A program made the translations under genes and the position numbers. From assembly GCF_006345805.1 (NCBI RefSeq), contig NC_043001.1, forward strand, positions 92,504,001 to 92,568,000: a DNA stretch of 64,000 bases. The letters are read 5' to 3'. The notes below the pieces were generated by a model. It was not told the origin of the DNA and made no database searches. It saw nothing but the letters and a program-made list of their open reading frames with translations. Position 1 is the stretch's first letter. Every line of letters begins with the position of its first letter. This document shows, piece by piece, positions 1-53,225 of the stretch. This DNA is from Octopus sinensis. Lineage: Eukaryota.

Positions 1-261
1 TGAAAACAGAAACAATTCCTATCATAGTAGGTGCATTAGGCATGATAAAAAATATTCAGACAAATACATAACAAAAACACCAGGACTTACAAACACATAT
101 AACATACAGAAAATTGCACTACTAGGCACTGCACACATCCTACGCAGAACACTTTCCATAAAATAACCATCAGAGCATCACAACAAATCACAGCACATAT
201 CCAAGGCACACAGAGCTGCGCTCGGTAGTGAAGTGAAAGCACGCTATAAAAATAAAACTAC
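1..261 (+). mobile_element. 3' end of an RLE-type (R4/Dong-like) non-LTR retrotransposon
   Basis: Encodes KTETIPIIVGALG and closely matches 18480-18729. It ends directly in (TAA)n followed by (GAA)n. Confidence 0.85.
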
Positions 262-368
262 ATAATAATAATAATAATAATAATGAAGAAGAAGAAGAAG
301 AAGAAGAAGAAGAAGAAGAAGAAGAAGAAGAAGAAGAAGAAGAAGAAGAAGAAGAAGAAGAAGAAGAA
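262..368. repeat. (TAA)n/(GAA)n microsatellite
   Basis: Seen directly in the sequence. Confidence 0.95.
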
Positions 369-389
369 AGAGCAACAGCAACAACAAAT

Positions 390-1385
390 AGGAGAGTGAA
401 AGGAACATCTGGGGGAAAAGAACCACTCAGCCCGTATCTCGGACAAATGCAAGACCTTGGTTATGGCTGAAGAATAGGGTATTTAAGAAAGAAACAGAAG
501 GATTCACAATGGCTTAAAGCCTATCATTGCGACCAGATATGCAGAGTATGTGATGAGAAAGAATAATCCGTTTTGCACTTATCAAATTCCTGTTGTCCTT
601 TGTCACAGAATTTAGACACAGACGCCCCAGTGTGGCCATGGCACTACACTGAGATATATTACGGCAAAAATTTTGAAGTAGGAAGAAAATAGTACCAGCA
701 TCAACGAAAAAGTGTAATTGAGAATGATAAGTATAAGGTCTTATGAACTTTAATATCACCTTGATCACCTTGACCGACCAGTACGTCGGGCGTCCATTTG
801 ACACCGCTGGTCACAGCACGCTGTCCACTCCTCTCTGGATCTCGCCTTTCTCATCCACGTGATCCCAATCGTCCTCCTGAAATCGTAACTCCACCGTCGT
901 GGAGGCCTTCCGGATGGTCGTTTCCGCTCGCGCGGGTACCACTCGATAGCTACGCGGGTCCACCGATTATCGGTGAGCCGGGCGACGTGTCCAGCCCATC
1001 TAAACTTGCTGCGTGTATACTCTGCGATGACATCCCTCACGCCGGACTTCTTTCTGATGATCTCGCTACTGATGTGCCCTCTCAACGAGATACCAAGCAT
1101 TGACCTTTCCATGGCTCTTTGGTAGTGAAACATGGGCTACCACAAAGAGAGAAGATGAACTTTAATATACTACGGCAAAAATTTTGAAGTAGGAAGAAAA
1201 TGGTACCAGCATCAACGAGAAAGTGTAATTGAGAATGATAAGTATAAGGTCTTATGTACTTTAATATACGGACTGAATACGAACTTCATGCAAGGCGACC
1301 AGATATCATCGTTCTGGACAAGGGGAAAAAGTAGTGCATAAGAAAATATCAGGATTTGGTTAGGGAAATTCGGCGACTCTGGCGG
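390..1385 (+). mobile_element. Degenerate second RLE-type LINE family, interrupted by an RTE insertion
   Basis: Broken frames give WLWLKNRVFKKETEGF, CRVCDEKE (zinc knuckle), ARRPDIIVLD and KYQDLVREIRRLW (RLE domain). Confidence 0.7.
757..1154 (-). mobile_element. 5'-truncated RTE-clade LINE with 14-bp TSD
   Basis: MERSMLGISL...KFRWAGHVARLTDNRWT...KRPSGRPPRRW is an RTE C-terminus. TSD ATGAACTTTAATAT at 743-756 and 1155-1168. Confidence 0.9.
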
Positions 1386-1389
1386 GATT

Positions 1390-3290
1390 TCCCAAAACTA
1401 ATAGGTGCTCTAGAAACCGATACCATCCACACCAGACTCATCCACCTTTCAACAAAAATACCGGAACTTGAAAAGTCGATGCCGGCTTTCAACCTCGTCC
1501 ACCATACTACTACCGGTTTCACCACAGCCACCAATCTGCTTTCCTTTCAACCTCATCCTCCACATTACCTCTTTCGCTATAGCCACCAAACTGGAAAGCT
1601 GCTTTCCCTTACCGGCCGAAAGAAGGCGACAAGGCGATCTTCACAATGGACTCAGCTGATAACCGAATCCGTCCGGCACGCCTCAACAGCAGTACGACAA
1701 AGCTCCCCACGCCAGCAATGTCAGGAGCCTGGATGAGTGCATACAGGACGGTTTGATCATCCTGTGGGTCCGTCTTACAGTACAACCGGGCCTATAGAGC
1801 TTGTGTTGATCTGGTAAAGCTCGCCGGTAACACTGTCATGCCAGAGATTTCTGGAAATTATCTATGGGTCTCGGCCCGAAAGGGCTCTCTAAAAGACCAG
1901 CTAATTGTTCTCTTCGACGCCCAGAATTTCCCCGAGGACGTCGTCGCTCTTGCTCGCCATTAATCCCCTATAGAACTCCAATGTGGAACATCCACCGACC
2001 ACATTGCTCGACTGGTAGAGGGCTGTGAGCGCTTGGCGACACTTCAGGTGCCAGGCACCATTTCTCGACCTGTACTCAATCAAGAACTATTTCTCCGTCA
2101 ATGAGCTGCGAAAAAATCTGTCTGACAAACGGCGACCACACTTGGAAAAGTTGGAGATGTCACAACCTCCAGGCATATCTGCACGTATTAGCCACAGCAT
2201 ATTCAATCCTCCATTTAGCGGCTGCTGACGTCATACGAATAGAACACGTCCCTTCTACACAAAACGGAAGAGCAAGCGCTCCAGCTTGATCAGCCGCGAA
2301 GCAGAAGAAACGATGGCCAGGCGGTAATAGACAAGGGAAGCAGCATATGCATTTGCCAACTCCCACCGACCTTTCAGGAACAGCTTCCACTCTTCCGCTT
2401 TCCGAATGAGACTAATCCTACAGGTCAACTCCCCCCACCGACACGCACCAGTTCTTGTCTACCTGGAGGTCTGGCCTCGATCATCACCGATCATCCTACA
2501 TCCCTTCCATTCAGCGCCCTGCAACACTGTAGGATGACATAGACTTTCCTCGCCAAGTGCCAAGCTGCAGGCCAACCGACTTCTCTTGGTTAATCTTTGC
2601 TCCTTTCACTGCTTCATATTACCATAAAGTAGAGCCGATCACCTCGATTTTTGAGAGGTCCGACACTATTACAGTGACGTCATCCACATAAGCTGACACG
2701 AGCCTTCCGCATCCAAGTTCACGTAGGATGCTCTTGAAACATCCAGTTCCTTAGTAATGGCTCGAAAGCTAGTACGTATATAAGGAGTGATAACGGGTAT
2801 CCTTGACGGACCGAACGTACGATGCTAAACTATTCCGATAGGTGACCATTTACTTTAACCACCGAACAGATATCCCTGTATATTGTAGCGATCCATCCAC
2901 TGAAAACGAGCCCGAAATCGACCGACGCGAGTACAGCCTCCAAGTACAAGTGGTCGACACTATCAAAAGTTTTCGGTCCAAATTGATCAGGTCCACATCC
3001 ATGCCAAGTTCCTTACCTCTCTATGGTGCAGCGCCTGAGGTGCACGTTGTCGTTCATATATGTATTTGGAATAGCGCATATGTGCAAATTACTGACCAGC
3101 TTAACGACAAGTACCAATCTCTTAGCTTGGCCAAAATCTTATAATCTGCACCCGACAACTTCCGATAGACTAACTTGCAAACCCGGTCTCTGAAAGCTTG
3201 ACGCATCAGAAAAGGCACATTCAGCTTCCAGTTTCCGGGGCCTTGCCTATGGATTCTATCTTGGTCGAGCATACGGCATGAAAATTTGTG
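1390..3290 (-). mobile_element. Degenerate Tx1/L1-clade LINE ORF2
   Basis: GPGNWKLN after the endonuclease region (about 3240), SAYVDDVTV RT motif (about 2690) and DNFQKSLAWQCYRR C-terminal region (about 1850). Many stops and deletions. Confidence 0.75.
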
Positions 3291-3889
3291 GTCTCTGCAG
3301 TCGAGGACGTTAAATTGTGGACAACTTATGCTACTTTAAGATGCGTGAAAGAATAGCCGGATAGCTTAATGCACTGATCAGCAGGAATGAAGGGATACTT
3401 GAGTGGGCAAATATTAGATGAACAGTACTGTGTTTGAAGGATTCTCGGGTCTTGCAAATAAAACTAAAGAACAAATGGACACGAGGGGAATGTTTCTATA
3501 CTACAAGCTTTTCTTACAGCGGTTCTCTACCGACAAAGTAGAGTGAAATTTCCGTGGGTGGTGCAGTAACCAACGTTTCAGACATGCTCCACATTCTTCA
3601 GGGTAAAAAAAAAGACAGGAGTGAGCTAAAAGAGTCTTACATCCTATATATTTGAGAAAATGGTTGCTACTGATGAGCAGTGCAGGACACCATGAGCTTC
3701 ATACGTAGACAGAAAATAGCAAGCAACATAAACTGGATGAGAGAGGGAAAAGGCAGGAGAAATGGAAAATCAGCCAAATTGTCAAAACATTAATGCTTAC
3801 AACGTCTTATATTACGAATAATATGTGACAATAGGAAAAAAATAAGTCAACCGGGCCTTATATTTTCATAGATCTATAGTGATTCTTGT

Positions 3890-4085
3890 GGAGGCACGTG
3901 GCTTAGTGGTAAGGGTGTCAGCACCATGATCGTAAGATTGTGGTTTCGATTCCTGGACCGGGCGACGCGTTGTGTTCTTGAGCAAAACACTTCATTTCAC
4001 GTTGCTCCAGTCCACTCAGCTGGCAAAAATGAGTAACGCTGCGAGGGACTGGCGTCCCGTCTAGCTGGGGAACACATACGCCATA
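3890..4085 (+). mobile_element. tRNA-derived SINE (family C)
   Basis: A/B-box-like head (TGGCTTAGTGG, GGTTTCGATTCC) plus TTGTGTTCTTGAGCAAAACACTT core. Related copies at about 10445-10570 and 30590-30880. Confidence 0.75.
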
Positions 4086-13665: not shown

Positions 13666-13811
13666 ATGGCAAGTTACTGTCACACACCCTCCAGGCACCC
13701 GCTCAACTTTGCCACTATTCCAGAAAAACTACATCAGCTTGCTATCGAAGATCCAGAAAAAGATGCAATAGTTATCTATGACAGCAAACTCCAAAGGACA
13801 AGTTTCACAAG
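13666..13811 (+). CDS. Exon 1 of an ANL-superfamily adenylate-forming enzyme (acyl-CoA synthetase/AMP-binding, ACSF2- or luciferase-like)
   Basis: ATG at 13666 opens MASYCHTPSRHPLNFATIPEKLHQLAIEDPEKDAIVIYDSKLQRTSFT, a typical ANL N-terminus. The donor AAG|GTATGT at 13811/13812 is phase 2 and joins exon 2 in frame. Confidence 0.85.
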
Positions 13812-14719
13812 GTATGTGTCATTTTCCCGATTTCGACAATCTCTGTCTTTTTCTTATTCTTTTCTTCAAAGACTGATTTCTTTCTCTACTTTCGACTGGA
13901 AAGAATTTGCGTGTGTTGGAGCTATCACAGGTTACATAATTTAGAGACATATTTCTACCAGTTAAGACGTCACTGTATTTCATTTTGACCATGGGAAAAT
14001 TTGAATAAACAAAGCTTAGAGATATTAGTCAATTTGAGTTCGGTATTTCATCGGGAACAGCGTTCGGTACAATTTGCAAGAATAAACATTCTATTGAAAC
14101 ACTAACTCAGTCTTCTGCATCGTGGTTTTCAATTTCTATGTTAGTCCAAGCTAAAAATCCTGTAACACACTCTGTTCAGCTACATCCTTCCTTGGACAAA
14201 CCTCCTACCATAGTATGAATTAAGTTGCTTTTTACTTGATGGAAACCAATAGTTTAGGTGAGATGTTATTGCAATATAGATCGATTACATACAATGATAA
14301 TATTAATTGGTGCCAAATGATTTAAAATAAGTCAAAATTTGCAAGTTACTTTAGAATTATTTAAATAATATTTTAGGGTGAAGTATGATTCGCTTATTTC
14401 TTACTACTAGAAAATGCACCCTTCACCAAAAATTAGTAGTTCTTAGAAAGCAAATACTGTAGATAAAAAAGTAGATCCCACTGCGAATCGCCTGCTAAAC
14501 TTATCACTTTTGCATGCAATCCCCCTCGGATTTGTTTCATTCCATTTGCTTAAGGCATAACCATCACATCAAAATAATTCCACACTCGATTAATATTTAT
14601 TACGCAAATATTCATTCGATATCTAACAGCTAAATCATTTTTGATAGAATTTGTAAACTGTATTTACATAAAATTTCATGATGGATTATATTATATTACT
14701 TTTTTCTTTTCTTGTAAAG

Positions 14720-16223
14720 GAAACAACTCTATGATGAAACGGAGAGTGTTGCTAGAGCCCTTGTCAAACAAGGAATCAAGAAAGGTGATCGAATTGCCCT
14801 CTGTGTATCGAACTGTGTGGAGTGGATTGCATATGACAGCGGCATTATGATGGCAGGAGGGTGTTCAGTGAGGCTGTTTGCTGGACAAGCCGATTTTTTA
14901 CCCATGTTAGAAGATTGTGTGGCAGTAATTTTTGACTCAGAGCCAACATTTTACAACAAATTACTTAAAGTAGCAAATATCTTAGAAGATGGCACTGTAA
15001 TCAGTGAAACGTACTCAAAACTGCGTCTTGCTATTACTGTTGCAAACACAAATTCAGATATTAAAGGTTTATCTTTAGATGAGATGAAAGAAACGGCAAA
15101 GAACGATCTGAACATAATTCTTCCTCGAGTGGACCCCGAAGATATCACAATTATTGCACAAACATCTGGATCAACAGGAAAACCTAAGCGGGTTACTCAT
15201 AGTAGTTTTGATATTGTTAATTGTTCCGAGATGTTTTGTGATCTTTATAATTTAACTGGCGACGATGCAGTTTTCATATCCCGTTATTTTGGCTTTGGAG
15301 GAGGGTACCCTTTCCCGTTTATCGGAAATGGATCTAAATTTGTCGACGCAGAATTACGTAGCATAAACTACCCAAAAGATTTTTCTAAATATAGAGATCT
15401 CGCGAAAATAGAGGGCTGTACTTGGTTGAATATGCTTCCGTCAGATTTACGTTACTGCACGGAAGGAAAAAATGTTGCACCTAACATAATGACAGGAGGT
15501 GATATAGCTTCTTTTGACGCGGTGAAACAAGGTTTAAATTGGGCATCGACGATTGATTACCATTTAGCAAGTGCTGAGACTCTTTTAATTGGATCAATGA
15601 CGATAACCAAGCATAATATAGGAGATTATGTTCCTGGAATAATTGGTCGACCATTTCCTAATACTGAAGCTAAAATTGTGGATGATAAAAACTGCATTGT
15701 CGACATCGGTCAAGAAGGTTATTTATGTGTTCGAAGTAAATGGTGCACAAAAGTAACTACTAATGGAGAATCTGTTCAACAAAATGGATGGTTTAAGACA
15801 AGAGACATATGTAAAATGAATGAAAAGAAGGAAATATTTCTGGTTAGCAGAGATGATCTGTTCATTCAGAAAGAAACTAGAAAAATAGGAATTACATTTG
15901 TTGAGCAGCATATGAAACGTCACCCAGATATTGATGACGTCATTCTTGTCCCTGTGCCAGATGAAGATCTTCAATTAAAAGCCTGTGCTTGTGTCATTAT
16001 GAAATCTGGAAAAAAATTTGATCAGAAAAATATTCTTCAATTCTGCATGGAAAACCTTCCTCAGCCAAAGGATTTTGACTATATATCATCAAACCCTGAT
16101 TATATTATACAGTTCGACAAATTTTCCAAATTGATAAATGGCAAGGTTGACAGAATCTCAATAAAGGACATGGCAATTAAATCTCTCGTTCAATCACATT
16201 CTTTGTGTGCGAAAACAAAATAA
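14720..16223 (+). CDS. Exon 2 of the ANL adenylate-forming enzyme (spliced product 549 aa)
   Basis: A polypyrimidine tract plus AAAG| acceptor ends at 14719. The frame continues R-KQLYDETESVARALVKQGIKKGDRIALCVSNCVEW into ORF 14817-16223. Motifs: KGDRIA (A2), QTSGSTGKPK (P-loop, A3), SAE (A5), WFKTRD (A7), SRDD (A8), NGKVDR (A10 Lys). Stop TAA at 16221-16223. Confidence 0.93.
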
Positions 16224-17267: not shown

Positions 17268-18725
17268 ACACACACAAATGAAAGAGAAAAATAAAGAAAG
17301 AATACTATAGACGAGTTAGATCAATACTAAAAACAGAGTTCAATGCTAAAAACAAGATAATAGGTATTAACACTTTAGCCGTCCCAGTTACAAGTTACAG
17401 CTACAATATCCTTAACTGGACACTAAATGAACTAACCAAAATAGATAGGAAAACAAGATAAATAATGACAGGATCTAAGATGCACCACCCAAATTTGACA
17501 TAGAAAGGTTATACATACAACGTATAGAAACTGGTAGAGACCTTATACAACTGGAAAACTATTATAAAATAACCACCATAGGACTGCAAAATATCTACTT
17601 CAGAAGCAAGGAAAACTGATACGAAAAACGGCAAAACACGGCCAAAACAAAAAACTGTTCTCAATATTTACGCTGACAAATGCAAAGAAATCATACTACC
17701 TAACAAATATGAAGAAGAAGAAGAAGAAGAAGAAGAAGAAGAAGAAGAAGAAGAAGAAGAAGAAGAAGAAGAAGAAGAAGAAGAAGAAGAAGAAGAAGAA
17801 GAAGAAGAAGAAGAAGAAGAAGAAACAACAAAAGTTATAAAACAAATGTAATCCAAAGTAAAACTAGAACAGCAACGATGGCAAGAAAAGCCCCTTCATA
17901 GCAAATACTGGACTAAACTAAATGCAAAAGAAATAGACAGAGAAAAATCCAAGCAATGGTTGAGAATCTCAGGACTCAAAGCAGAGACAGAGGGGTTTTT
18001 AATTGCAGCACAAGACCAAAGCCTCCCCACCAGAAATTACCAAAAACATATAATGAAAAGAAAAATAACAAGTAACTGCAGAATATGTGGAGATGGACAA
18101 GAAACAGTAAATCACATTATCTCTGGCTGCCCAGTCCTGGCTAAGAAGGAATATATTCACAGACACGACAGAGTTGGGACCTATATACACTGGAAGCTAT
18201 GTCAACACTATGGAATAACAACAGAAAAAAGATGGTATAGGCACACACCAGAAAAGGTCACAGAAAACGAGAAAGCAACCATACTCTGGGATATGCCGAT
18301 ACACACAGATAAAGAAATTAAGGCCAATAGACCAGATATAGTTGTCAGAGATCATGAAGAAAAAAAATGCTTTCTAATTGATGTATCAATACCAGCAGAT
18401 GACAACGTGTCTCTAAAAGGAATGGAGAAACTTTCAAAATACAAAGACCTGGAAATAGAGGTAACTAGAATGTGGAATCTAAAAACAGAAACAATTCCTA
18501 TCATAGTAGGTGCATTAGGCATGATAAAAAAATTTCAAATACATAACAAAAACACCAGGACTTACGAACACCTATAACATACAGAAAATTTCACTACTAG
18601 GCACTGCACACATCCAACGCAGAACACTTTCCATACAGTAACCATCAGAGCATCACAGCACATACCCAAGGCATACAGAGCTGCGCTCGGTAGTGAAGTG
18701 AAAGTACTATATAAAAATAAAACTA

Positions 18726-18729
<4 letters not shown>
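17268..18729 (+). mobile_element. 5'-truncated RLE-type (R4/Dong-like) LINE inserted in (TAA)n
   Basis: RT-thumb remnant KEYYRRVRSILKTEFNAKNK. ORF 17960-18577 has a CRIC...HIISGC zinc knuckle and an RPDIVV...CFLIDVSIP...KYKDL restriction-like endonuclease. (TAA)4 lies at 17256-17267 and (TAA)n follows 18729. Confidence 0.9.
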
Positions 18730-18765
<36 letters not shown>

Positions 18766-18786
18766 TAATAATATAATAATAATAAT

Positions 18787-18853
<67 letters not shown>

Positions 18854-19071
18854 GCAGCAGCAACAGCAACAACAACAACACAACAACAACAACAACAACA
18901 ACAATAATAATAACAATAATAATAATAATAATAACAATAACAATAATAATAATAATAATAATAACAATAACAATAATAATAATAATAACAACAACAACAA
19001 CAAACAACAACAACAACAACAACAGCAACAACAACAATAACAATAACAATAACAATAACAATAATAATAAC

Positions 19072-19135
<64 letters not shown>
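18730..19135. repeat. Compound (TAA)/(CAA)/(CAG) microsatellite
   Basis: Seen directly in the sequence. Confidence 0.95.
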
Positions 19136-20039: not shown

Positions 20040-20074
<35 letters not shown>

Positions 20075-20311
20075 TATATATATATTATATATATATATAT
20101 GCATATATATATATGCATATATATATATGCATATATATATATGCATATATATATATGCATATATATATATGCATATGCATATATATATATATACATATAT
20201 GCATATATATATATATAGCATATATATATATATTATATATATATGCATATATATATATATATGCATATATGTATATATATACATATGCATATATATATAT
20301 ATATATATATT

Positions 20312-20345
<34 letters not shown>

Positions 20346-20419
20346 TATATATATATGCATATATATATGCATATATATATATATGCATATATATATATAT
20401 GCACATATATATATATATA

Positions 20420-20463
<44 letters not shown>

Positions 20464-20600
20464 ATATATATATATATATATATATACATATATGTATTGG
20501 GTTGAAATATATACATATATGTAGAGGGTTGAAATACATAACTATATATATATATATATAATATATATATATATTATATATATATATATACATATATGTA
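20040..20600. repeat. (TA)n microsatellite with periodic TGC interruptions
   Basis: Seen directly; source of the Y/I-rich spurious ORFs. Confidence 0.95.
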
Positions 20601-21610
20601 TTACAAAGGGAAGTTGTAAGGTACCGCACGAGTGGAAATATATATGAAAGAAGGTTTGAAAATGCAATTTTAAAATGTGTTTATTCACTTGACCGGTTTC
20701 ACTTTTTTAGAAAAAGATTGTCAAAAGTAATATATATACATATGCGGCGAGCTGGCAGACACGTTAGCGCGCCAGGCGAGATGCTTAGCGGTATTTCATC
20801 TGCCACTACGTTCTGAGTTCAAATTCCACCGAGATCGACTTTGCCTTTCATCTTTTCGGGGTCGATAAATAACGTACCAGTTTCGCACTGGGGTCGATGT
20901 AATCGACTTAATCCGTTTGTCTGTCCTTGTTTGTTCCCTCTGTGTGTAGCCTCTTGTGGACAGTAAAGAAATACATATATCTTTTATTTATTTCAGTGAT
21001 TTGACTGCGGCCATGCTAGCACCCCCCCCCACCTTTAAGAAAAGTGGTGGGAGGAACAAGCACTAACACAAACACATACATGCGTACACACACACATACA
21101 GACAAACGCACACGCATACGTGTATGTATGTATATATGTGTGTGTGTGTGTGTGTAAATATTTCCACTCTCTCCCTTTCTCTCTCTCTATCTCTTTCTCA
21201 TTCACCCACACACACACACCCACACACACACCCACACACACACTCACACACACTGTATTTCTCTCTAAACAACTTTTAATCTTCCCCATTTCTTTCCTTT
21301 CTCTATAGAGATAGTGTTACGGACAGCGATAAGTTGACGGTCAAAGGGAAATAACTCATCTCAGTAGCTACAAGAAACTGAAGACATGCATGAAGATGAG
21401 TTGTTTCCCTTAGACCATAAACTCACCGTTTTTGTAGAAGTACGTTTGTTAAATAAGAGTAACCTCACTTCGCACACATGTGTACTCGCGCACGCACACA
21501 TACACACATTCGTGCACACGCGCGCGTGTGCGCATGCGTATGCAGGATGTCCCAGAATGATTTATCTATGTTTGAGACTCTTCCTGAAGAATATCGATTC
21601 CGGCAATATC

Positions 21611-28759: not shown

Positions 28760-29990
28760 ATTTATGATGAAACATAAACAGTGTTTTTTGGCAAGAGTGT
28801 TAGTCAAGCAAAGAACAAAGGAAGATTATCGAATTTCCATCTCTAATTGAACCTTGAATTGATGACATTATGACAACGATATCACAATGACTATAGGATA
28901 TTGAATAGCTGATTACTTTTCCATGCTTGAGGATTATGTTGCAATAAATTTTGACTCAGACATCTCTGTTTGCAACAAATTGTTTAAGGTGGCAAATATT
29001 TTAGGAGATGGTGTTGTAGTCAGTAGAACTTCCCTGAAATTATGTCTTACTATTAATGCTTCATAATCAAAACCAATAATTAAATATTCATCTTTAATTA
29101 CTGAAAATATTGTGAATGTAACTGTCCCACTGGTCATTATACTCATGCAATTAGATGCCATAAATGTGCTGACATTTATTTTCAATAAATAAATAAAATT
29201 GCAAAGGGCAAACTTTTCAATGGCTGTTATTCTGTTTTGGTGGAATATATCTGTAAAAAATAATAATAATGAAATTATTGTATACAGTGCTCAGATGCAC
29301 TGTAACTGAGCAACTGAGTTGAAATCTTCTGTTGTAGCAGATATATGTAGTTTACTCAAAAGGATTTTCAAAAGGGATATTCTGATAAAGGAAGGTTGTA
29401 ATATACCATGTATTCTGCCATTGGATTTATGTTTCTCTACTGAAAAAGAAAAGGTTTTGGATCACATAAGATGGTATTGCTTTCTTTGATGCCATAGAAA
29501 GTGGTTTATATATGACACTTTTATCATAAATCAACTTTTTTTTCTAACTGCCAAAACTTGGAAAATAGACACCCTCCAAGGACAATTTCAGAGAATATGT
29601 TACTGGAATAATTGGTCAACCACTTCCAGATGTTGAAATTAAAATTGTGGATGATAAAAACTGTGTTGCCGATATTGGTAAAGAAGGTTATTTATGTGTG
29701 TAAAATAGATGGTGCACAAACATAAATACTGACAGAGAATCACTTCTAGACAATGGATGGTTTTAAGACATGAGACATTTGTAAAATGATAGAGAATACG
29801 GAAATAATTATGCTTGGCAGAAATGTTAACTTCATTCAGAAGTCTGCAAGAAAATTATCAGATCTGCAGAACAACAGTGCATTGTTAACCAGATAATGAT
29901 GACATCGTTATCGTCTGTACCAGCTGAATTACAAAATGAATTGTAAAGAACTGTTGAAAAAAAATTATTCAATTCTGCATTGAAAATATA
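28760..29990 (+). pseudogene. Degenerate tandem paralog of ANL exon 2
   Basis: Colinear with 14720-16050. Example: DNFREYVTGIIGQPLPDVEIKIVDDKNCVADIGKEGYLCV*NRWCT versus HNIGDYVPGIIGRPFPNTEAKIVDDKNCIVDIGQEGYLCVRSKWCT. It has TAA at 29701, TGA at 29771, a +1 frameshift near 29761 and an eroded P-loop. The 3' end runs into a Tc1 remnant and no exon-1 copy is visible. Confidence 0.88.
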
Positions 29991-50959: not shown

Positions 50960-53225
50960 TTACAACATTTCACTGTCCATTGATTTAAAATATTGCTGCT
51001 GCAAATGAGTAAGTTGCTTGCGTCGATATTCATAGTATTCTTCGCGCAGCCGTTCAAAACGTTTTTCAGAGTTGCTATAGCGACTCGGCTTACGTGGCTT
51101 TGGGTAGAGACTTTTATACAAATCATTAGCATTTAACAAAATTTCTGGTGGTGAAGCTGTGCTCCGGGTGGAAGGCTCTCGGCGTGTTGAGTGTCTTTCA
51201 TCCAGTTTACACTCAACAATACCTGGAGCATTGTGAGATATTAATGTTGAGTCAAAATCGTAGTGTTCATCTCCTGAGAAGTCCCGTCGGTTGGAATTAG
51301 AAGCATCTATAATCAGGGAAGAGTCCAAACTGACATCATAGTCTTGAGGGGAAGTAAGAGAACTCGCTGAAGTACTGTCCATGGGTGCTGCAGCCCTCGT
51401 GTGAGTGTAAAACGAAGACGATGGACCACTGTGGTGACTACCAAGTCCACTGCTATAGGAGTCTGGAAATGTATCCATTTTACTACTAGTACGGCTGATG
51501 CCATCGGGGTAGTTAACCCTGCCAAATATACTTCCCCGACCTGAGCTACTCATACTAGTTCGAATCTCTTCTGGGACTCCACCATCAAAATGATGACTAA
51601 GTACAGTGTCGATGTTTGGAGTTTTATTCCTATAGCATGGCATGGTCGTAGAATAGTCACTTGGCTGATCCTTAGCAGGGTATGTGCTATTTGTGTGGGG
51701 TATGTTTTCAATGCAGTTATAGGGGTCAAATTCTTTTTGTCTAAAAGTAGAGTTAGTCTGTGATGGTATTGGTGACATCTGATGAGGTTGGTTGACAGCA
51801 AGAGTACAGTTGGAGTTCAGCTGATGTTTAGGGGCCAGTTGACCACATTTAACCATCTCTTGACAATTATTTGAATATCCAAATAACTGGTTGTTGTTGT
51901 CCTTGCACTCTCCACCTTCTGAATTGTTGTAAAGTGAGTGTGAATGTGTATAGCTTACATGGGGCACGAAATTGTGGTTGTGTGTTGCAACAGCTGCTGC
52001 TTGCGTCTGGAGTTGGTGAGGGTTAGAAAAATTTTTTCTTACATTATCAAGGTGAAACTGAGGCTGAGGTTGAGGCTGGTAGTAATTAGGCCCTTGGCCA
52101 GTATGAAAATAAGCTGAAGAATTTCGTTGCTGGGGGTGAATGCTTCGAGTTTTAAATGGCACTGTACCAGAATAAGTGAGCTGTTGGTTTTCTTTCAAAT
52201 GTCTTTTCAAATAGACTGGCTCATTTTCAGAAAGGCTGGAAGGAAGAAAGCTTCCTTGAGGGCTACTGAATAGTGACTGTGGCAGATCTTGGTCACGTGA
52301 CCGCTCTGAAAATGATGAAGGCTGTACAGAACTGATATCGCTTATCTGGAATGGGCGAAGACTGTTAGCATCATCAGGGCTACTTGTCAAGTAGGTTTTG
52401 TTCATAGAGTGATGTTGTGAGTTAGGTGAGAATATAGAGCTATGAGCATAACATGACTTAAGAGATGCTATAGATGAAGATGACTTGAGATGTTGAGCAT
52501 GATGGTAAATAGCAGCAGCAGCAGCAGGGGCAGCAGACATACCAGGTGAAGTTCTAGTCCAAACTGGTGACGTCATATGATTTCTAAGAGTATTAGTGCC
52601 AGGAGAATGTCCAGAGTCCAGAGTGAGAGTAGTAGTAGAAACAACTATGCTAGAAGCATGTTTATACTTCTGTGTATTGTCTGGAACACTGACACCATTT
52701 GGCCTATGAATTTGTGCTCTTGTAATATGCAAATTAACAGGGGAGTGCGACTGTAGCAAACAGGGTGAAACAGGGTTATAAACATTACTGCGGTGAACAC
52801 TTGTACAGGCAATCCCGTGCCCAATGGGGGACATAGGACCAGGAGAGGATAACTGTTGTTGTCTTAGTGATGTTACAATGTCTGTGTCTGGACATTGCTG
52901 AACCAGTTTGTTGGGAGGTCTTACATTAGCAAGTTTTGTGTCCTGTTGTTGGGTTTTGGCCCCATTGTTGAGGGATGTACTTTTTGGAAGGGCACTGCGC
53001 TGAACAGACTTCTGTTGGTCCTGAAAAATATAAGGTCGCAATGATGATGGTGGCAAATGTCGTTTGGAAGGCAGTGGTTGGGCAACGGGATTGCATTTTA
53101 ATATGTCCGAAGGGGAGTGGCAGGACATCACAAAAGTTTGGTTTAGCATACCCATAGGGTTGACAGCTTTCACAATGTTTCTTCTTCCATCTTGGTCCCC
53201 ATAATTCCATTCTGACGAAGTTTCA
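50960..53225 (-). CDS. tutl: Terminal 2266-nt coding exon: S/Q/P/H-rich cytoplasmic tail of the turtle/IGSF9-like receptor
   Basis: TTTACAG| acceptor at 53227-53226, in frame with the 737-aa ORF. It ends SEKRFERLREEYYEYRRKQLTHLQQQYFKSMDSEML*, resembling the R-x-x-x-L-R-E-E-[FY]-x-x-[FY]-R-R C-terminal box of turtle/IGSF9, with a possible PDZ-binding end. Confidence 0.8.

What the first reader, a model, noticed from the sequence alone, without database searches (positions are those of the whole stretch)
13666..16223. Intact but motif-remodelled stand-alone adenylating enzyme of the acyl-CoA synthetase/luciferase fold
Seen: an open 549-aa frame retains the P-loop (TSGSTGKPK), A5 Glu, A7 Asp, A8 Arg and A10 Lys. 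It deviates at positions that are normally near-invariant: PKG>PKR, YGxTE>LASAE, TGD>TRD and GRxxD>SRDD. The glycine-containing hairpin after A8 (usually xGGxN or KGxQ) reads IQKETRK. Established: in ANL enzymes that hairpin lines the pantetheine/CoA tunnel of the second half-reaction, and the Watasenia firefly-squid photophore proteins (wsluc1-3) are ANL-family members. Inference: this may be an adenylation-competent enzyme that has lost or changed CoA ligation. It could represent a cephalopod branch with a new chemistry, such as amide or other small-molecule conjugation, or oxidation, possibly related to the lineage that gave squid luciferase. This is the best candidate for an undescribed system in this window.
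Basis: partly seen in the sequence, partly recalled or inferred. Interest (0 to 1): 0.8.

Follow-up and report, generated by a model that had tools for sequence, protein, structure and literature searches.

The report
Octopus relative of firefly-squid luciferase-like enzymes
This is an intact, already annotated octopus gene for an ATP-using "adenylating" enzyme; its closest relatives outside octopods are the crystal proteins thought to make light in the firefly squid, it has lost several sequence hallmarks of ordinary acyl-CoA synthetases, and its chemistry in a non-luminous animal is unknown.

Summary
The frame is real. It has two exons (13666-13811 and 14720-16223) split by a 908-nt GT..AG intron, giving 549 aa. 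The protein is identical to Octopus sinensis XP_029636918.1 ("putative acyl-CoA synthetase YngI").

Three changes hit truly near-invariant glycines: A5, A7 and the A8 hairpin. The "PKG" and "GRxxD" glycines are variable in relatives, and the A8 hinge Asp is still present.

The gene lies in a same-strand tandem array of 4-5 paralogs plus a shattered pseudogene at about 28770-29990.

A profile search of the whole library, direct comparison with published wsluc sequences and an NJ tree (300/300) place it in a cephalopod-only clade with the Watasenia luciferase-like proteins wsluc1-4. That clade sits inside an uncharacterised molluscan ANL expansion.

The motif losses came in layers: hairpin Gly in many molluscs, PK[R/K] and A7 Gly in cephalopods, A5 only in this Octopus array.

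dN/dS against O. bimaculoides is 0.37, with no indels in the CDS. The adenylation residues are kept.

An altered or lost CoA step is plausible but untested. The octopus-wsluc link was published in 2016.

The parts
13666..13811 (+). Exon 1 (146 nt; codons 1-48 plus 2 nt of codon 49), starting at the ATG
   Evidence: The same 146-nt first exon followed by GT is present in O. bimaculoides, in O. vulgaris paralogs and in both Argonauta genes.
13812..14719 (+). Intron, 908 nt, GTATGT...TGTAAAG, phase 2
   Evidence: It is 91.3% identical to the O. bimaculoides intron.
14720..16223 (+). Exon 2 (1504 nt including the TAA stop); holds all catalytic motifs
15162..15191 (+). A3 P-loop, TSGSTGKPKR (residues 197-206)
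   Evidence: PK followed by R or K is confined to the cephalopod sequences compared, though not universal there (clade B has PKC/PKG, wsluc1 FKW).
15279..15311 (+). Remodelled A4, SRYFGFGGGYP (236-246). Aromatic F241 sits at the usual His/Phe position.
   Evidence: The [DE]R.[FM]..xGG.P form is shared by the whole molluscan clade.
15564..15578 (+). A5, LASAE (331-335). The Glu is kept; the Tyr-Gly and Thr are lost.
   Evidence: Among the cephalopod sequences compared, Y and G are both lost only in this Octopus array (wsluc2-4 keep Y but not G).
15798..15806 (+). A7, TRD (409-411). The Asp is kept; Gly is replaced by Arg.
15846..15884 (+). A8 hinge plus hairpin, SRDDLFIQKETRK (425-437). R426 and D428 are kept; the terminal Gly is Thr435; the hairpin is basic (K433, R436, K437).
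16125..16154 (+). A10, SKLINGKVDR (518-527). The catalytic Lys524 is kept; Pro is replaced by Ser.
28770..29990 (+). Decayed paralog (pseudogene) of the same family and same orientation. It has many stops and frameshifts and no P-loop region.

Best explanation
Identity (shown). The locus is an intact two-exon gene that selection is maintaining. It is one of 4-5 same-strand tandem paralogs ('clade A', found only in the genus Octopus). These belong to a cephalopod-specific branch of the ANL adenylating-enzyme superfamily that also contains the Watasenia scintillans photophore-crystal proteins wsluc1-4.

Likely mechanism (inferred).
- It lacks the roughly 40-90-residue N-terminal extension of ACSF2 proteins, so it is probably cytosolic.
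- It binds Mg-ATP and adenylates a small-molecule substrate, using the conserved P-loop, E335, D411, R426 and K524.
- The C-terminal domain then probably still rotates about the retained A8 hinge (R426, D428).
- The face it presents in that second state is altered. The universal hairpin Gly is replaced by Thr, flanked by K433, R436 and K437. The A5 and A7 glycines around the nucleotide are also replaced.
- The second half-reaction is therefore probably not a canonical CoA thioesterification. Candidates are reaction of the adenylate with another nucleophile or with O2, as proposed for the squid proteins, or a much-modified CoA step.

The substrate is unknown.
For: - Gene model and identity to XP_029636918.1.
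- Tandem array on O. vulgaris OX597818.1, with genes at 98.81, 98.85-98.86 and 98.877 Mb, four consecutive protein accessions, plus the pseudogene in the window.
- ANL fold.
- wsluc link.
- Motif layers.
- Constraint: NG86 dN/dS is 0.37 against O. bimaculoides (Fisher p = 3.7e-8) and 0.29-0.45 among paralogs. The 0-fold/4-fold divergence ratio is 0.36. There are no internal indels in 1650 nt of CDS, against 15 gap openings in about 2.4 kb of non-coding sequence in the same alignment. The frame is also open in a fourth octopod genome (L005).
- No curated CoA-ligase family is matched: the best NCBIfam score is 153 bits against a cutoff of 832.
- In acetyl-CoA synthetase, the A8 Gly and the Arg two residues after it contact the adenylate only in the thioester-forming conformation (PMC8383264). 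An A4 aromatic residue gates the pantetheine tunnel (PMC8905533).
Against: - No biochemical data exist for this protein, for any molluscan relative, or, in the papers held, for recombinant wsluc.
- Loss of the hairpin Gly also occurs in many bivalve, chiton and Lingula relatives that could be ordinary CoA ligases.
- The hairpin Gly is conserved in ANL enzymes that do not use CoA, such as luciferase and NRPS A domains. Its loss is therefore not specific evidence about CoA.
- The A4 aromatic gate is retained.
- AF2 gave only the adenylate-forming conformation, so the tunnel could not be examined.
- Transcription was not tested.
- Overall CDS identity to O. bimaculoides (91.0%) is no higher than intron identity (91.3%). 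Constraint is therefore moderate.
Confidence: 0.6

Rival explanations
1. It is an ordinary medium- or long-chain acyl-CoA synthetase, as annotated ('YngI'/'ACSF2-like'). On this view the motif changes are tolerated drift within a molluscan subfamily, and CoA thioesterification proceeds normally.
For: - The best sequence matches among solved structures are CoA ligases: oxalyl-CoA synthetase 6qjz at 4e-22.
- All adenylation residues and the A8 hinge Arg/Asp are kept.
- The A4 aromatic gate is kept.
- Three of 98 ordinary homologs also have Ala at the hairpin Gly position.
- Many bivalve relatives share T or A there.
Against: - Three near-invariant glycines and the A5 Thr are replaced together, and the A4 and A10 Pro residues as well.
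- Scores are far below every curated CoA-ligase family cutoff.
- There is no N-terminal presequence of the kind ACSF2 has.
- The nearest relatives with any functional context are the Watasenia photophore proteins.
Confidence: 0.3
2. It is a non-catalytic derivative of an enzyme, either a structural or crystallin-like protein or a ligand-binding pseudoenzyme. This would be comparable to other enzyme-derived cephalopod crystallins and to the crystal-forming habit of wsluc proteins.
For: - wsluc1-3 are the bulk constituents of photophore crystals (PMC4899746).
- Several catalytic-site motifs are degraded.
- Constraint is only moderate.
Against: - The P-loop, E335, D411, R426 and K524 are kept in the window protein. 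In the other clade A proteins compared all are kept except that two have Lys at the A8 Arg and one older, C-terminally divergent model lacks A10. In Argonauta, clade B and the wsluc sequences where the region is available they are kept except for changed P-loops in wsluc1 (FKW) and one clade B protein.
- Octopus vulgaris/sinensis has no photophores (my own knowledge).
Confidence: 0.07
3. It is a recently inactivated or untranscribed duplicate drifting towards pseudogene status, like its neighbour at about 28.8-30 kb.
For: - The tandem array shows birth and death of copies.
- The CDS is no more conserved than the intron at the nucleotide level.
- Short windows around A7/A8 give dN/dS near 1 (counts are small).
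Against: - dN/dS of 0.37 is significantly below 1.
- There are no indels or stops in four octopod genomes.
- Splice sites are conserved.
- The true pseudogene next door is shattered.
Confidence: 0.03

Closest known systems
Watasenia scintillans luciferase-like proteins wsluc1-4 (Gimenez et al. 2016, PMC4899746; AXM90650.1 'luciferase-like protein 4')
   Same: - Same cephalopod-only clade (300/300).
- 32-35% identity, collinear from the first residues (MxSY.H...), except that wsluc1 has a 105-residue N-terminal extension.
- No mitochondrial presequence.
- Shared derived states: PK[R/K] after the P-loop, a non-Gly residue in A7, no Gly in the A8 hairpin, and a retained A10 Lys.
   Different: - wsluc proteins keep Tyr in A5 (Y[A/S]S.E), have TDD in A7 and a hairpin of IIK[ST]DCCI.
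- They come from a luminous squid and form photophore crystals.
- The window gene belongs to a separate Octopus-only subclade (A). Octopus clade B is closer to wsluc (38-40% identity).
- Luciferase activity of wsluc itself has not been shown with recombinant protein in the papers held.
Molluscan/brachiopod 'ACSF2-like / YngI-like / FadD3-like' ANL expansion (Pecten, Crassostrea, Mytilus, Mya, Sinanodonta, Liolophura, Lingula); uncharacterised
   Same: - About 550 aa, with an A4 of the form [DE]R.[FM]..xGG.P.
- Frequent TDD in A7 and frequent loss of the hairpin Gly (ISRGTRKI, IKRSTIKI).
- Intron-poor and tandemly duplicated: Pecten has an intronless CDS with a twin 9 kb away.
   Different: - About 25% identity.
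- They keep YG.TE in A5 and lack the Arg or Lys after PK.
ACSF2 (medium-chain acyl-CoA ligase, mitochondrial), the closest relative with experimental function according to PMC4899746
   Same: ANL fold and adenylation motifs.
   Different: - 20-25% identity (20-21% to the arthropod ACSF2 here; 24-26% human ACSF2 to wsluc per PMC4899746).
- ACSF2 has canonical A4 (PLFH.FG), A5 (YG.TE), A7 (TGD) and A8 (GR.KE.I.RGGEN) motifs and an N-terminal presequence.
- Arthropod ACSF2 falls outside the molluscan clade in the NJ tree.
Beetle (firefly) luciferase
   Same: Best structural match of the AF2 model (TM 0.80, adenylate-forming conformers). It is an ANL enzyme whose second step is oxygenation.
   Different: - Only 16-18% identity.
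- Luciferase keeps the A8 Gly.
- The position of its Lys443 aligns with E434 here (my alignment of the A8 strings).
- Any similarity in function would have arisen independently.

Membership tests
ANL superfamily (Pfam PF00501 AMP-binding) | Profile score above the curated cutoff for the N-terminal domain | tested here: met
   122.9 bits against a cutoff of 29.9, residues 30-392.
ANL superfamily | Two-domain ANL fold | tested here: met
   AF2 pLDDT 87.5, pTM 0.82. Foldseek E about 1e-36 and TM 0.73-0.80 to luciferases, PheA, McbA and CoA ligases.
ANL superfamily | A3 motif (S/T)(S/T)G(S/T)TGxPK | tested here: met
   TSGSTGKPK, residues 197-205.
ANL superfamily | A7 motif (S/T)GD | tested here: not met
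   The sequence is TRD. The Asp is kept; the Gly (95/98 in relatives) is Arg.
ANL superfamily | A8 hinge motif Rx(D/K)xxxxxxG | tested here: not met
   R426-D-D428-L-F-I-Q-K-E-T435. The Arg and the hinge Asp are present; the terminal Gly is Thr.
ANL superfamily | A10 motif PxxxxGK with the catalytic Lys | tested here: inconclusive
   SKLINGK. The Gly-Lys is present; the Pro (98/98 in relatives) is Ser.
ANL superfamily | C-terminal domain profile (PF13193) | tested here: inconclusive
   21.0 bits, below the 24.5-bit cutoff, although the fold is predicted.
Acyl-CoA synthetase (functional class; ACSF2/YngI/FadD as annotated) | Forms an acyl-CoA thioester | not testable with these tools
   Needs an enzyme assay.
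Acyl-CoA synthetase (functional class) | Reaches the cutoff of a curated CoA-ligase family model | tested here: not met
   Best NCBIfam score is 152.9 bits against a cutoff of 832. No family is passed.
ACSF2 orthologs | Groups with ACSF2 and has an N-terminal mitochondrial presequence | tested here: not met
   The arthropod ACSF2 sequences fall outside the molluscan clade. The protein starts at the conserved core, with no extension. No vertebrate ACSF2 was included in the tree.
Cephalopod wsluc-like clade | Monophyly with Watasenia wsluc1-4 to the exclusion of other molluscan ANL proteins | tested here: met
   Bootstrap support of 200/200 and 300/300 in NJ trees. wsluc4 is the top non-octopod hit in the whole-library profile search. 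NJ only; wsluc1 and wsluc3 were available only as their first 400 residues.
Cephalopod wsluc-like clade | Shared derived motif states (PK[R/K], non-Gly in A7, no Gly in the A8 hairpin) | tested here: met
Cephalopod wsluc-like clade | ATP-dependent light emission with coelenterazine disulfate; crystal formation in photophores | not testable with these tools
   Not shown even for recombinant wsluc in the papers held.
Fatty acyl-AMP ligases (FAAL) | About 20-residue insertion in the N-terminal domain that blocks domain rotation | tested here: not met
   No such insertion relative to CoA-ligase homologs in the alignments. The defining feature is from my own knowledge.

The most novel reading that the evidence does not exclude
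The Octopus clade A enzymes may be CoA-independent adenylating enzymes that keep something close to the pre-luminous function of the squid luciferase family. Examples would be ATP-dependent activation followed by oxygenation, or transfer to a non-thiol acceptor, of a cephalopod metabolite. They might then show latent ATP-dependent luminescence with coelenterazine-type substrates.
Probability: 0.12. Interest if true: 0.8.

Novelty: new member of a known kind. Interest (0 to 1): 0.42.

Why it matters
The firefly-squid light reaction is one of the few ATP-dependent bioluminescence systems. Its enzyme has still not been demonstrated with recombinant protein.

Non-luminous octopuses keep two groups of close relatives of the candidate luciferases. 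One is a tandem array under purifying selection with a further remodelled active site. This gives a concrete comparative set for three questions:
- What did the family do before light production?
- Which motif changes go with loss of CoA chemistry?
- Is luciferase activity latent in these proteins?

This parallels the work that linked insect acyl-CoA synthetases to beetle luciferase.

For genome annotation, names such as 'YngI', 'ACSF2-like' and 'oxalate--CoA ligase-like' on these genes are similarity labels with no functional support.

Tried and rejected
1. Bacterial horizontal transfer or a retrogene as an explanation for the nearly intronless gene and the 'YngI' name. Not pursued. The gene sits inside a large molluscan/brachiopod clade. 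The Pecten relative has an intronless CDS. The origin of the whole clade could not be resolved with NJ.
2. The Logan contig for P0003 as evidence of a transcript. It carries the intron, so it is genomic. No expression evidence was obtained.
3. Literature on expression or function of octopus 'YngI'/luciferase-like genes. Nothing was found beyond PMC4899746 and PMC7708342.
4. 'Clade A evolves faster than its relatives'. Tajima relative-rate tests were not significant.
5. 'The C-terminal domain is relaxed'. dN/dS is 0.45 against 0.36 for the N-terminal domain, on small counts, so this is not conclusive.
6. Inspection of the CoA tunnel.
8. Gulick's 2009 review was not held. The motif definitions were taken from PMC10510592 instead.
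9. An Rfam scan of the window found no RNA family.
Full report
**What is at the locus**

The span 13666-16223 is not one open frame. The ORF list shows a 92-aa ORF from the ATG at 13666 and a 468-aa ORF ending at 16223. Reading the DNA gives a canonical intron, GTATGT...TTCTTGTAAAG, at 13812-14719. Joining 13666-13811 to 14720-16223 yields 1650 nt, which is 549 codons plus a stop.

The protein is identical over 549/549 residues to XP_029636918.1, 'putative acyl-CoA synthetase YngI [Octopus sinensis]'. It differs at one residue (G308A) from O. vulgaris CAI9723267.1. The window is about 99% identical in DNA to the O. vulgaris locus, so it most likely comes from O. sinensis. The gene is therefore already annotated, under a similarity-derived name.

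**Motif check**

I measured how unusual each change is against 98 non-octopus homologs.

| Position | State in 98 homologs | State here |
|---|---|---|
| A5 Gly | G in 94 | Ala |
| A5 Thr | T or S in 94 | Ala |
| A7 Gly | G in 95 | Arg |
| A8-hairpin Gly | G in 95 | Thr |
| G of 'PKG' | G in only 30 (A 32, M 22, P 13); Arg in none | Arg |
| G of 'GRxxD' | G in only 28 | Ser |

With the published A8 definition Rx(D/K)xxxxxxG (PMC10510592), the window protein keeps R426 and the hinge D428 and lacks only the terminal Gly.

A4 is rebuilt as SRYFGFGGGYP, although an aromatic residue remains at the usual His/Phe position. The A10 Pro (98/98 in relatives) is Ser. E335, D411, R426 and K524 are retained.

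**Family and relatives**

Pfam places the protein in AMP-binding (1.9e-35). The C-terminal domain model falls just under its cutoff. No curated NCBIfam CoA-ligase family is approached: the best score is 153 bits against a cutoff of 832.

The first homology search found only Octopus proteins at 59-100% identity. It then dropped to Lingula 'ACSF2-like' at 25% and bacterial ligases at about 24%.

Gimenez et al. 2016 reported that the only database hits above 30% identity to the Watasenia crystal proteins wsluc1-4 were O. bimaculoides proteins. I took the wsluc sequences from their supplement. Only the first 400 residues of wsluc1-3 are stored; wsluc2 and wsluc4 are available in full from Supplementary Fig. 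S1. The window protein is 35%, 32% and 35% identical to wsluc1, wsluc2 and wsluc3, with E-values of 5e-57 to 3e-76. The alignment is collinear from the first residues, apart from wsluc1's 105-residue N-terminal extension.

I then ran a profile of the Octopus array against 1.84 billion representative proteins. This search is independent of the paper.
- After the Octopus cluster itself came Argonauta hians (503 bits).
- Next was 'Luciferase-like protein 4 [Watasenia scintillans]' (371 bits, E = 7.5e-106).
- Single-domain hits then dropped to about 257 bits or less. Those looked up were bivalve and chiton proteins and unnamed metagenome or read-assembly contigs (Sinanodonta, Potamilus, Liolophura, Mya, Mytilus, Ruditapes, Mizuhopecten, Pecten, Crassostrea). 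Multi-domain NRPS hits in that range sum scores over several stretches and were ignored.

Searching with wsluc4 exposed a second Octopus group ('clade B') on another chromosome. It is 38-40% identical to wsluc4. The same search found a further squid sequence from a read-archive assembly.

NJ trees with bootstrap gave the following support:
- All cephalopod sequences together: 200/200 and 300/300.
- The window's array ('clade A', genus Octopus only): 300/300.
- Clade B plus both Argonauta genes: 296/300.
- The squid group: 295/300.

The order of these three groups is not resolved. Squid plus clade B gets 168/300, and all octopods together get 118/300.

**The motif losses are layered**

| Change | Where it is found |
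|---|---|
| A4 of the form [DE]R.[FM]..xGG.P | The whole molluscan/brachiopod clade |
| Hairpin Gly replaced by T or A | Many of those relatives (ISRGTRKI, IKRSTIKI, IKRAAVLI) and every cephalopod member |
| Arg or Lys after PK | Only in cephalopod sequences, though not all (clade B has PKC/PKG, wsluc1 FKW) |
| A7 Gly replaced (D in wsluc, S in clade B and Argonauta, R/T/S in clade A) | Cephalopods; D also in many bivalve relatives |
| A5 loses both Y and G | Clade A only (clade B, Argonauta par2 and squid P0300 read YGSTE; Argonauta P0121 YGSSE; wsluc Y[A/S]S.E) |
| Ser425 | O. sinensis/O. vulgaris only |

The residue after the hinge is Asp in six of eight Octopus sequences aligned. It is Leu in the window protein and Gln in its O. 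bimaculoides ortholog.

It is met in part: for the hairpin Gly and A4, and partly for A7 (TDD is common in bivalve relatives), but not for A5 or PKR. None of those molluscan proteins has been characterised, so 'ordinary' is itself unproven.

**Genomic setting**

In O. vulgaris the paralogs lie on one strand of OX597818.1, with genes at 98.81, 98.85-98.86 and 98.877 Mb. They carry four consecutive protein accessions. O. bimaculoides has at least five paralogs.

All of them share the 146-nt first exon and the phase-2 intron. The annotated 462-aa P0008 simply lacks its first exon, which I found 2.9 kb upstream. Both Argonauta genes have the same structure. A Pecten relative has an intronless CDS with a tandem twin.

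About 12.5 kb downstream in the window there is another copy on the same strand, broken by many stops and frameshifts. The array therefore evolves by birth and death of copies. This copy also shows what an unconstrained family member looks like.

**Constraint**

- Against the O. bimaculoides ortholog (86% amino-acid identity), dN = 0.072, dS = 0.193 and dN/dS = 0.37 (Fisher p = 3.7e-8). Paralog pairs give 0.29-0.45.
- Divergence is 0.051 at 0-fold sites and 0.142 at 4-fold sites.
- The CDS has no internal indel. The non-coding part of the same blastn alignment has 15 gap openings in about 2.4 kb. At that rate I would expect about ten in the CDS.
- The frame is also open in a fourth, unidentified octopod genome.

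There is one caveat that I cannot fully explain. Overall nucleotide identity of the CDS (91.0%) is no higher than that of the intron (91.3%) or the flanks. Relative to alignable non-coding DNA, amino-acid sites are only mildly constrained (a ratio of about 0.6). Purifying selection is real but moderate.

Short windows across A7/A8 give ratios near 1, on very small counts. Relative-rate tests show no overall acceleration of clade A.

**Structure**

AF2 with a 106-sequence alignment gives a confident ANL fold (pLDDT 87.5, pTM 0.82). Foldseek matches firefly luciferases in the adenylate-forming state best (TM 0.77-0.80). Thioester-state structures match at TM about 0.64. The model is therefore in the first conformation and says nothing about a CoA tunnel.

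**How it most likely works**

Shown:
- It is an intact ANL-fold protein with every residue used for adenylation.
- It lacks the N-terminal extension of ACSF2.
- It has no fused carrier or condensation domain, and no other called gene lies within about 10 kb in the orthologous and paralogous loci.

Inferred:
- It adenylates a small substrate with Mg-ATP in the cytosol.
- The retained hinge suggests the C-terminal domain still rotates.
- In acetyl-CoA synthetase, the A8 Gly and the Arg two residues later contact the adenylate only in the rotated state (PMC8383264). An A4 aromatic residue gates the pantetheine tunnel (PMC8905533).
- Here the Gly is Thr and is followed by an invariant Arg436 and then Lys/Arg437. 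The second state is therefore probably still used, but with a different geometry.
- Whether the acceptor is still CoA cannot be decided from sequence. I put about 0.6 on an altered, non-canonical second step and 0.3 on an ordinary CoA ligase.
- From memory, mutating this Gly in Salmonella acetyl-CoA synthetase impairs the thioester step and spares adenylation. I could not retrieve that paper here.

For Watasenia, the proposal is adenylation of coelenterazine disulfate followed by oxygenation (PMC4899746). This is not demonstrated with recombinant protein in any paper held.

**Novelty**

The family link between octopus proteins and wsluc was published in 2016, and the gene is annotated. The following appear to be new:
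- the split into two Octopus groups;
- the tandem-array structure with a pseudogene;
- the layered history of motif loss, with the A5 loss specific to this array;
- the measured constraint.

I class it as a new member of a known, functionally unresolved kind.

**Limits**

- Trees are NJ on Kimura distances.
- wsluc1 and wsluc3 are partial.
- Cephalopod sampling in the databases is thin.
- There are no expression data and no biochemistry.

Noticed in passing
window 28770-29990 (+): A decayed copy of the same ANL gene family. It has 40-70% amino-acid identity in pieces spread over three frames, many stops, and no P-loop segment. It lies in the same orientation as the intact gene.
   Followed up: yes
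window 13666-16223 vs L001 10001-12530: CDS identity to O. bimaculoides (91.0%) is no higher than that of the intron (91.3%) or the 500-nt upstream flank (94.3%). Four-fold sites (p = 0.142) diverge faster than alignable non-coding DNA (about 0.08). The cause is unexplained. Possibilities are conserved non-coding sequence, alignment bias, or an elevated synonymous rate.
   Followed up: partly
window 50960-53173 (-): A 737-aa open frame rich in Ser, Pro and Gln with no Pfam match. It coincides with a local GC rise (0.385) and strong GC skew (+0.21). It is probably a large coding exon of a neighbouring gene.
   Followed up: partly
window 17960-18577 (+) and 765-1133 (-): Remnants of non-LTR retrotransposon ORFs. 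The first has a weak zf-RVT match (3.4e-5, below cutoff). The second was recognised by eye as a reverse-transcriptase-tail-like sequence, in a GC-rich stretch (1-4000, GC 0.45).
   Followed up: partly
window 17711-17824, 18729-19134, 20043-20601: Long microsatellites just downstream of the gene: (GAA)38, an array of about 400 nt of (AAT/AAC)n, and about 280 copies of (AT)n.
   Followed up: no
L004 6817-6962 and 9895-11389: The O. vulgaris annotation CAI9723266.1 (462 aa) is truncated. A conserved 146-nt first exon lies 2.9 kb upstream, which gives a full-length paralog.
   Followed up: yes
L007 10001-11662 and 19204-20865: The Pecten maximus relatives have intronless coding sequences (1662 nt for 553 aa) and are in tandem. 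The molluscan clade as a whole is intron-poor. Its origin (retroposition or something else) is open.
   Followed up: partly
L006 10001-13799 (+) and 16459-19640 (-): Argonauta hians has two neighbouring family members in opposite (convergent) orientation. Both group with Octopus clade B and not with the window's array.
   Followed up: yes
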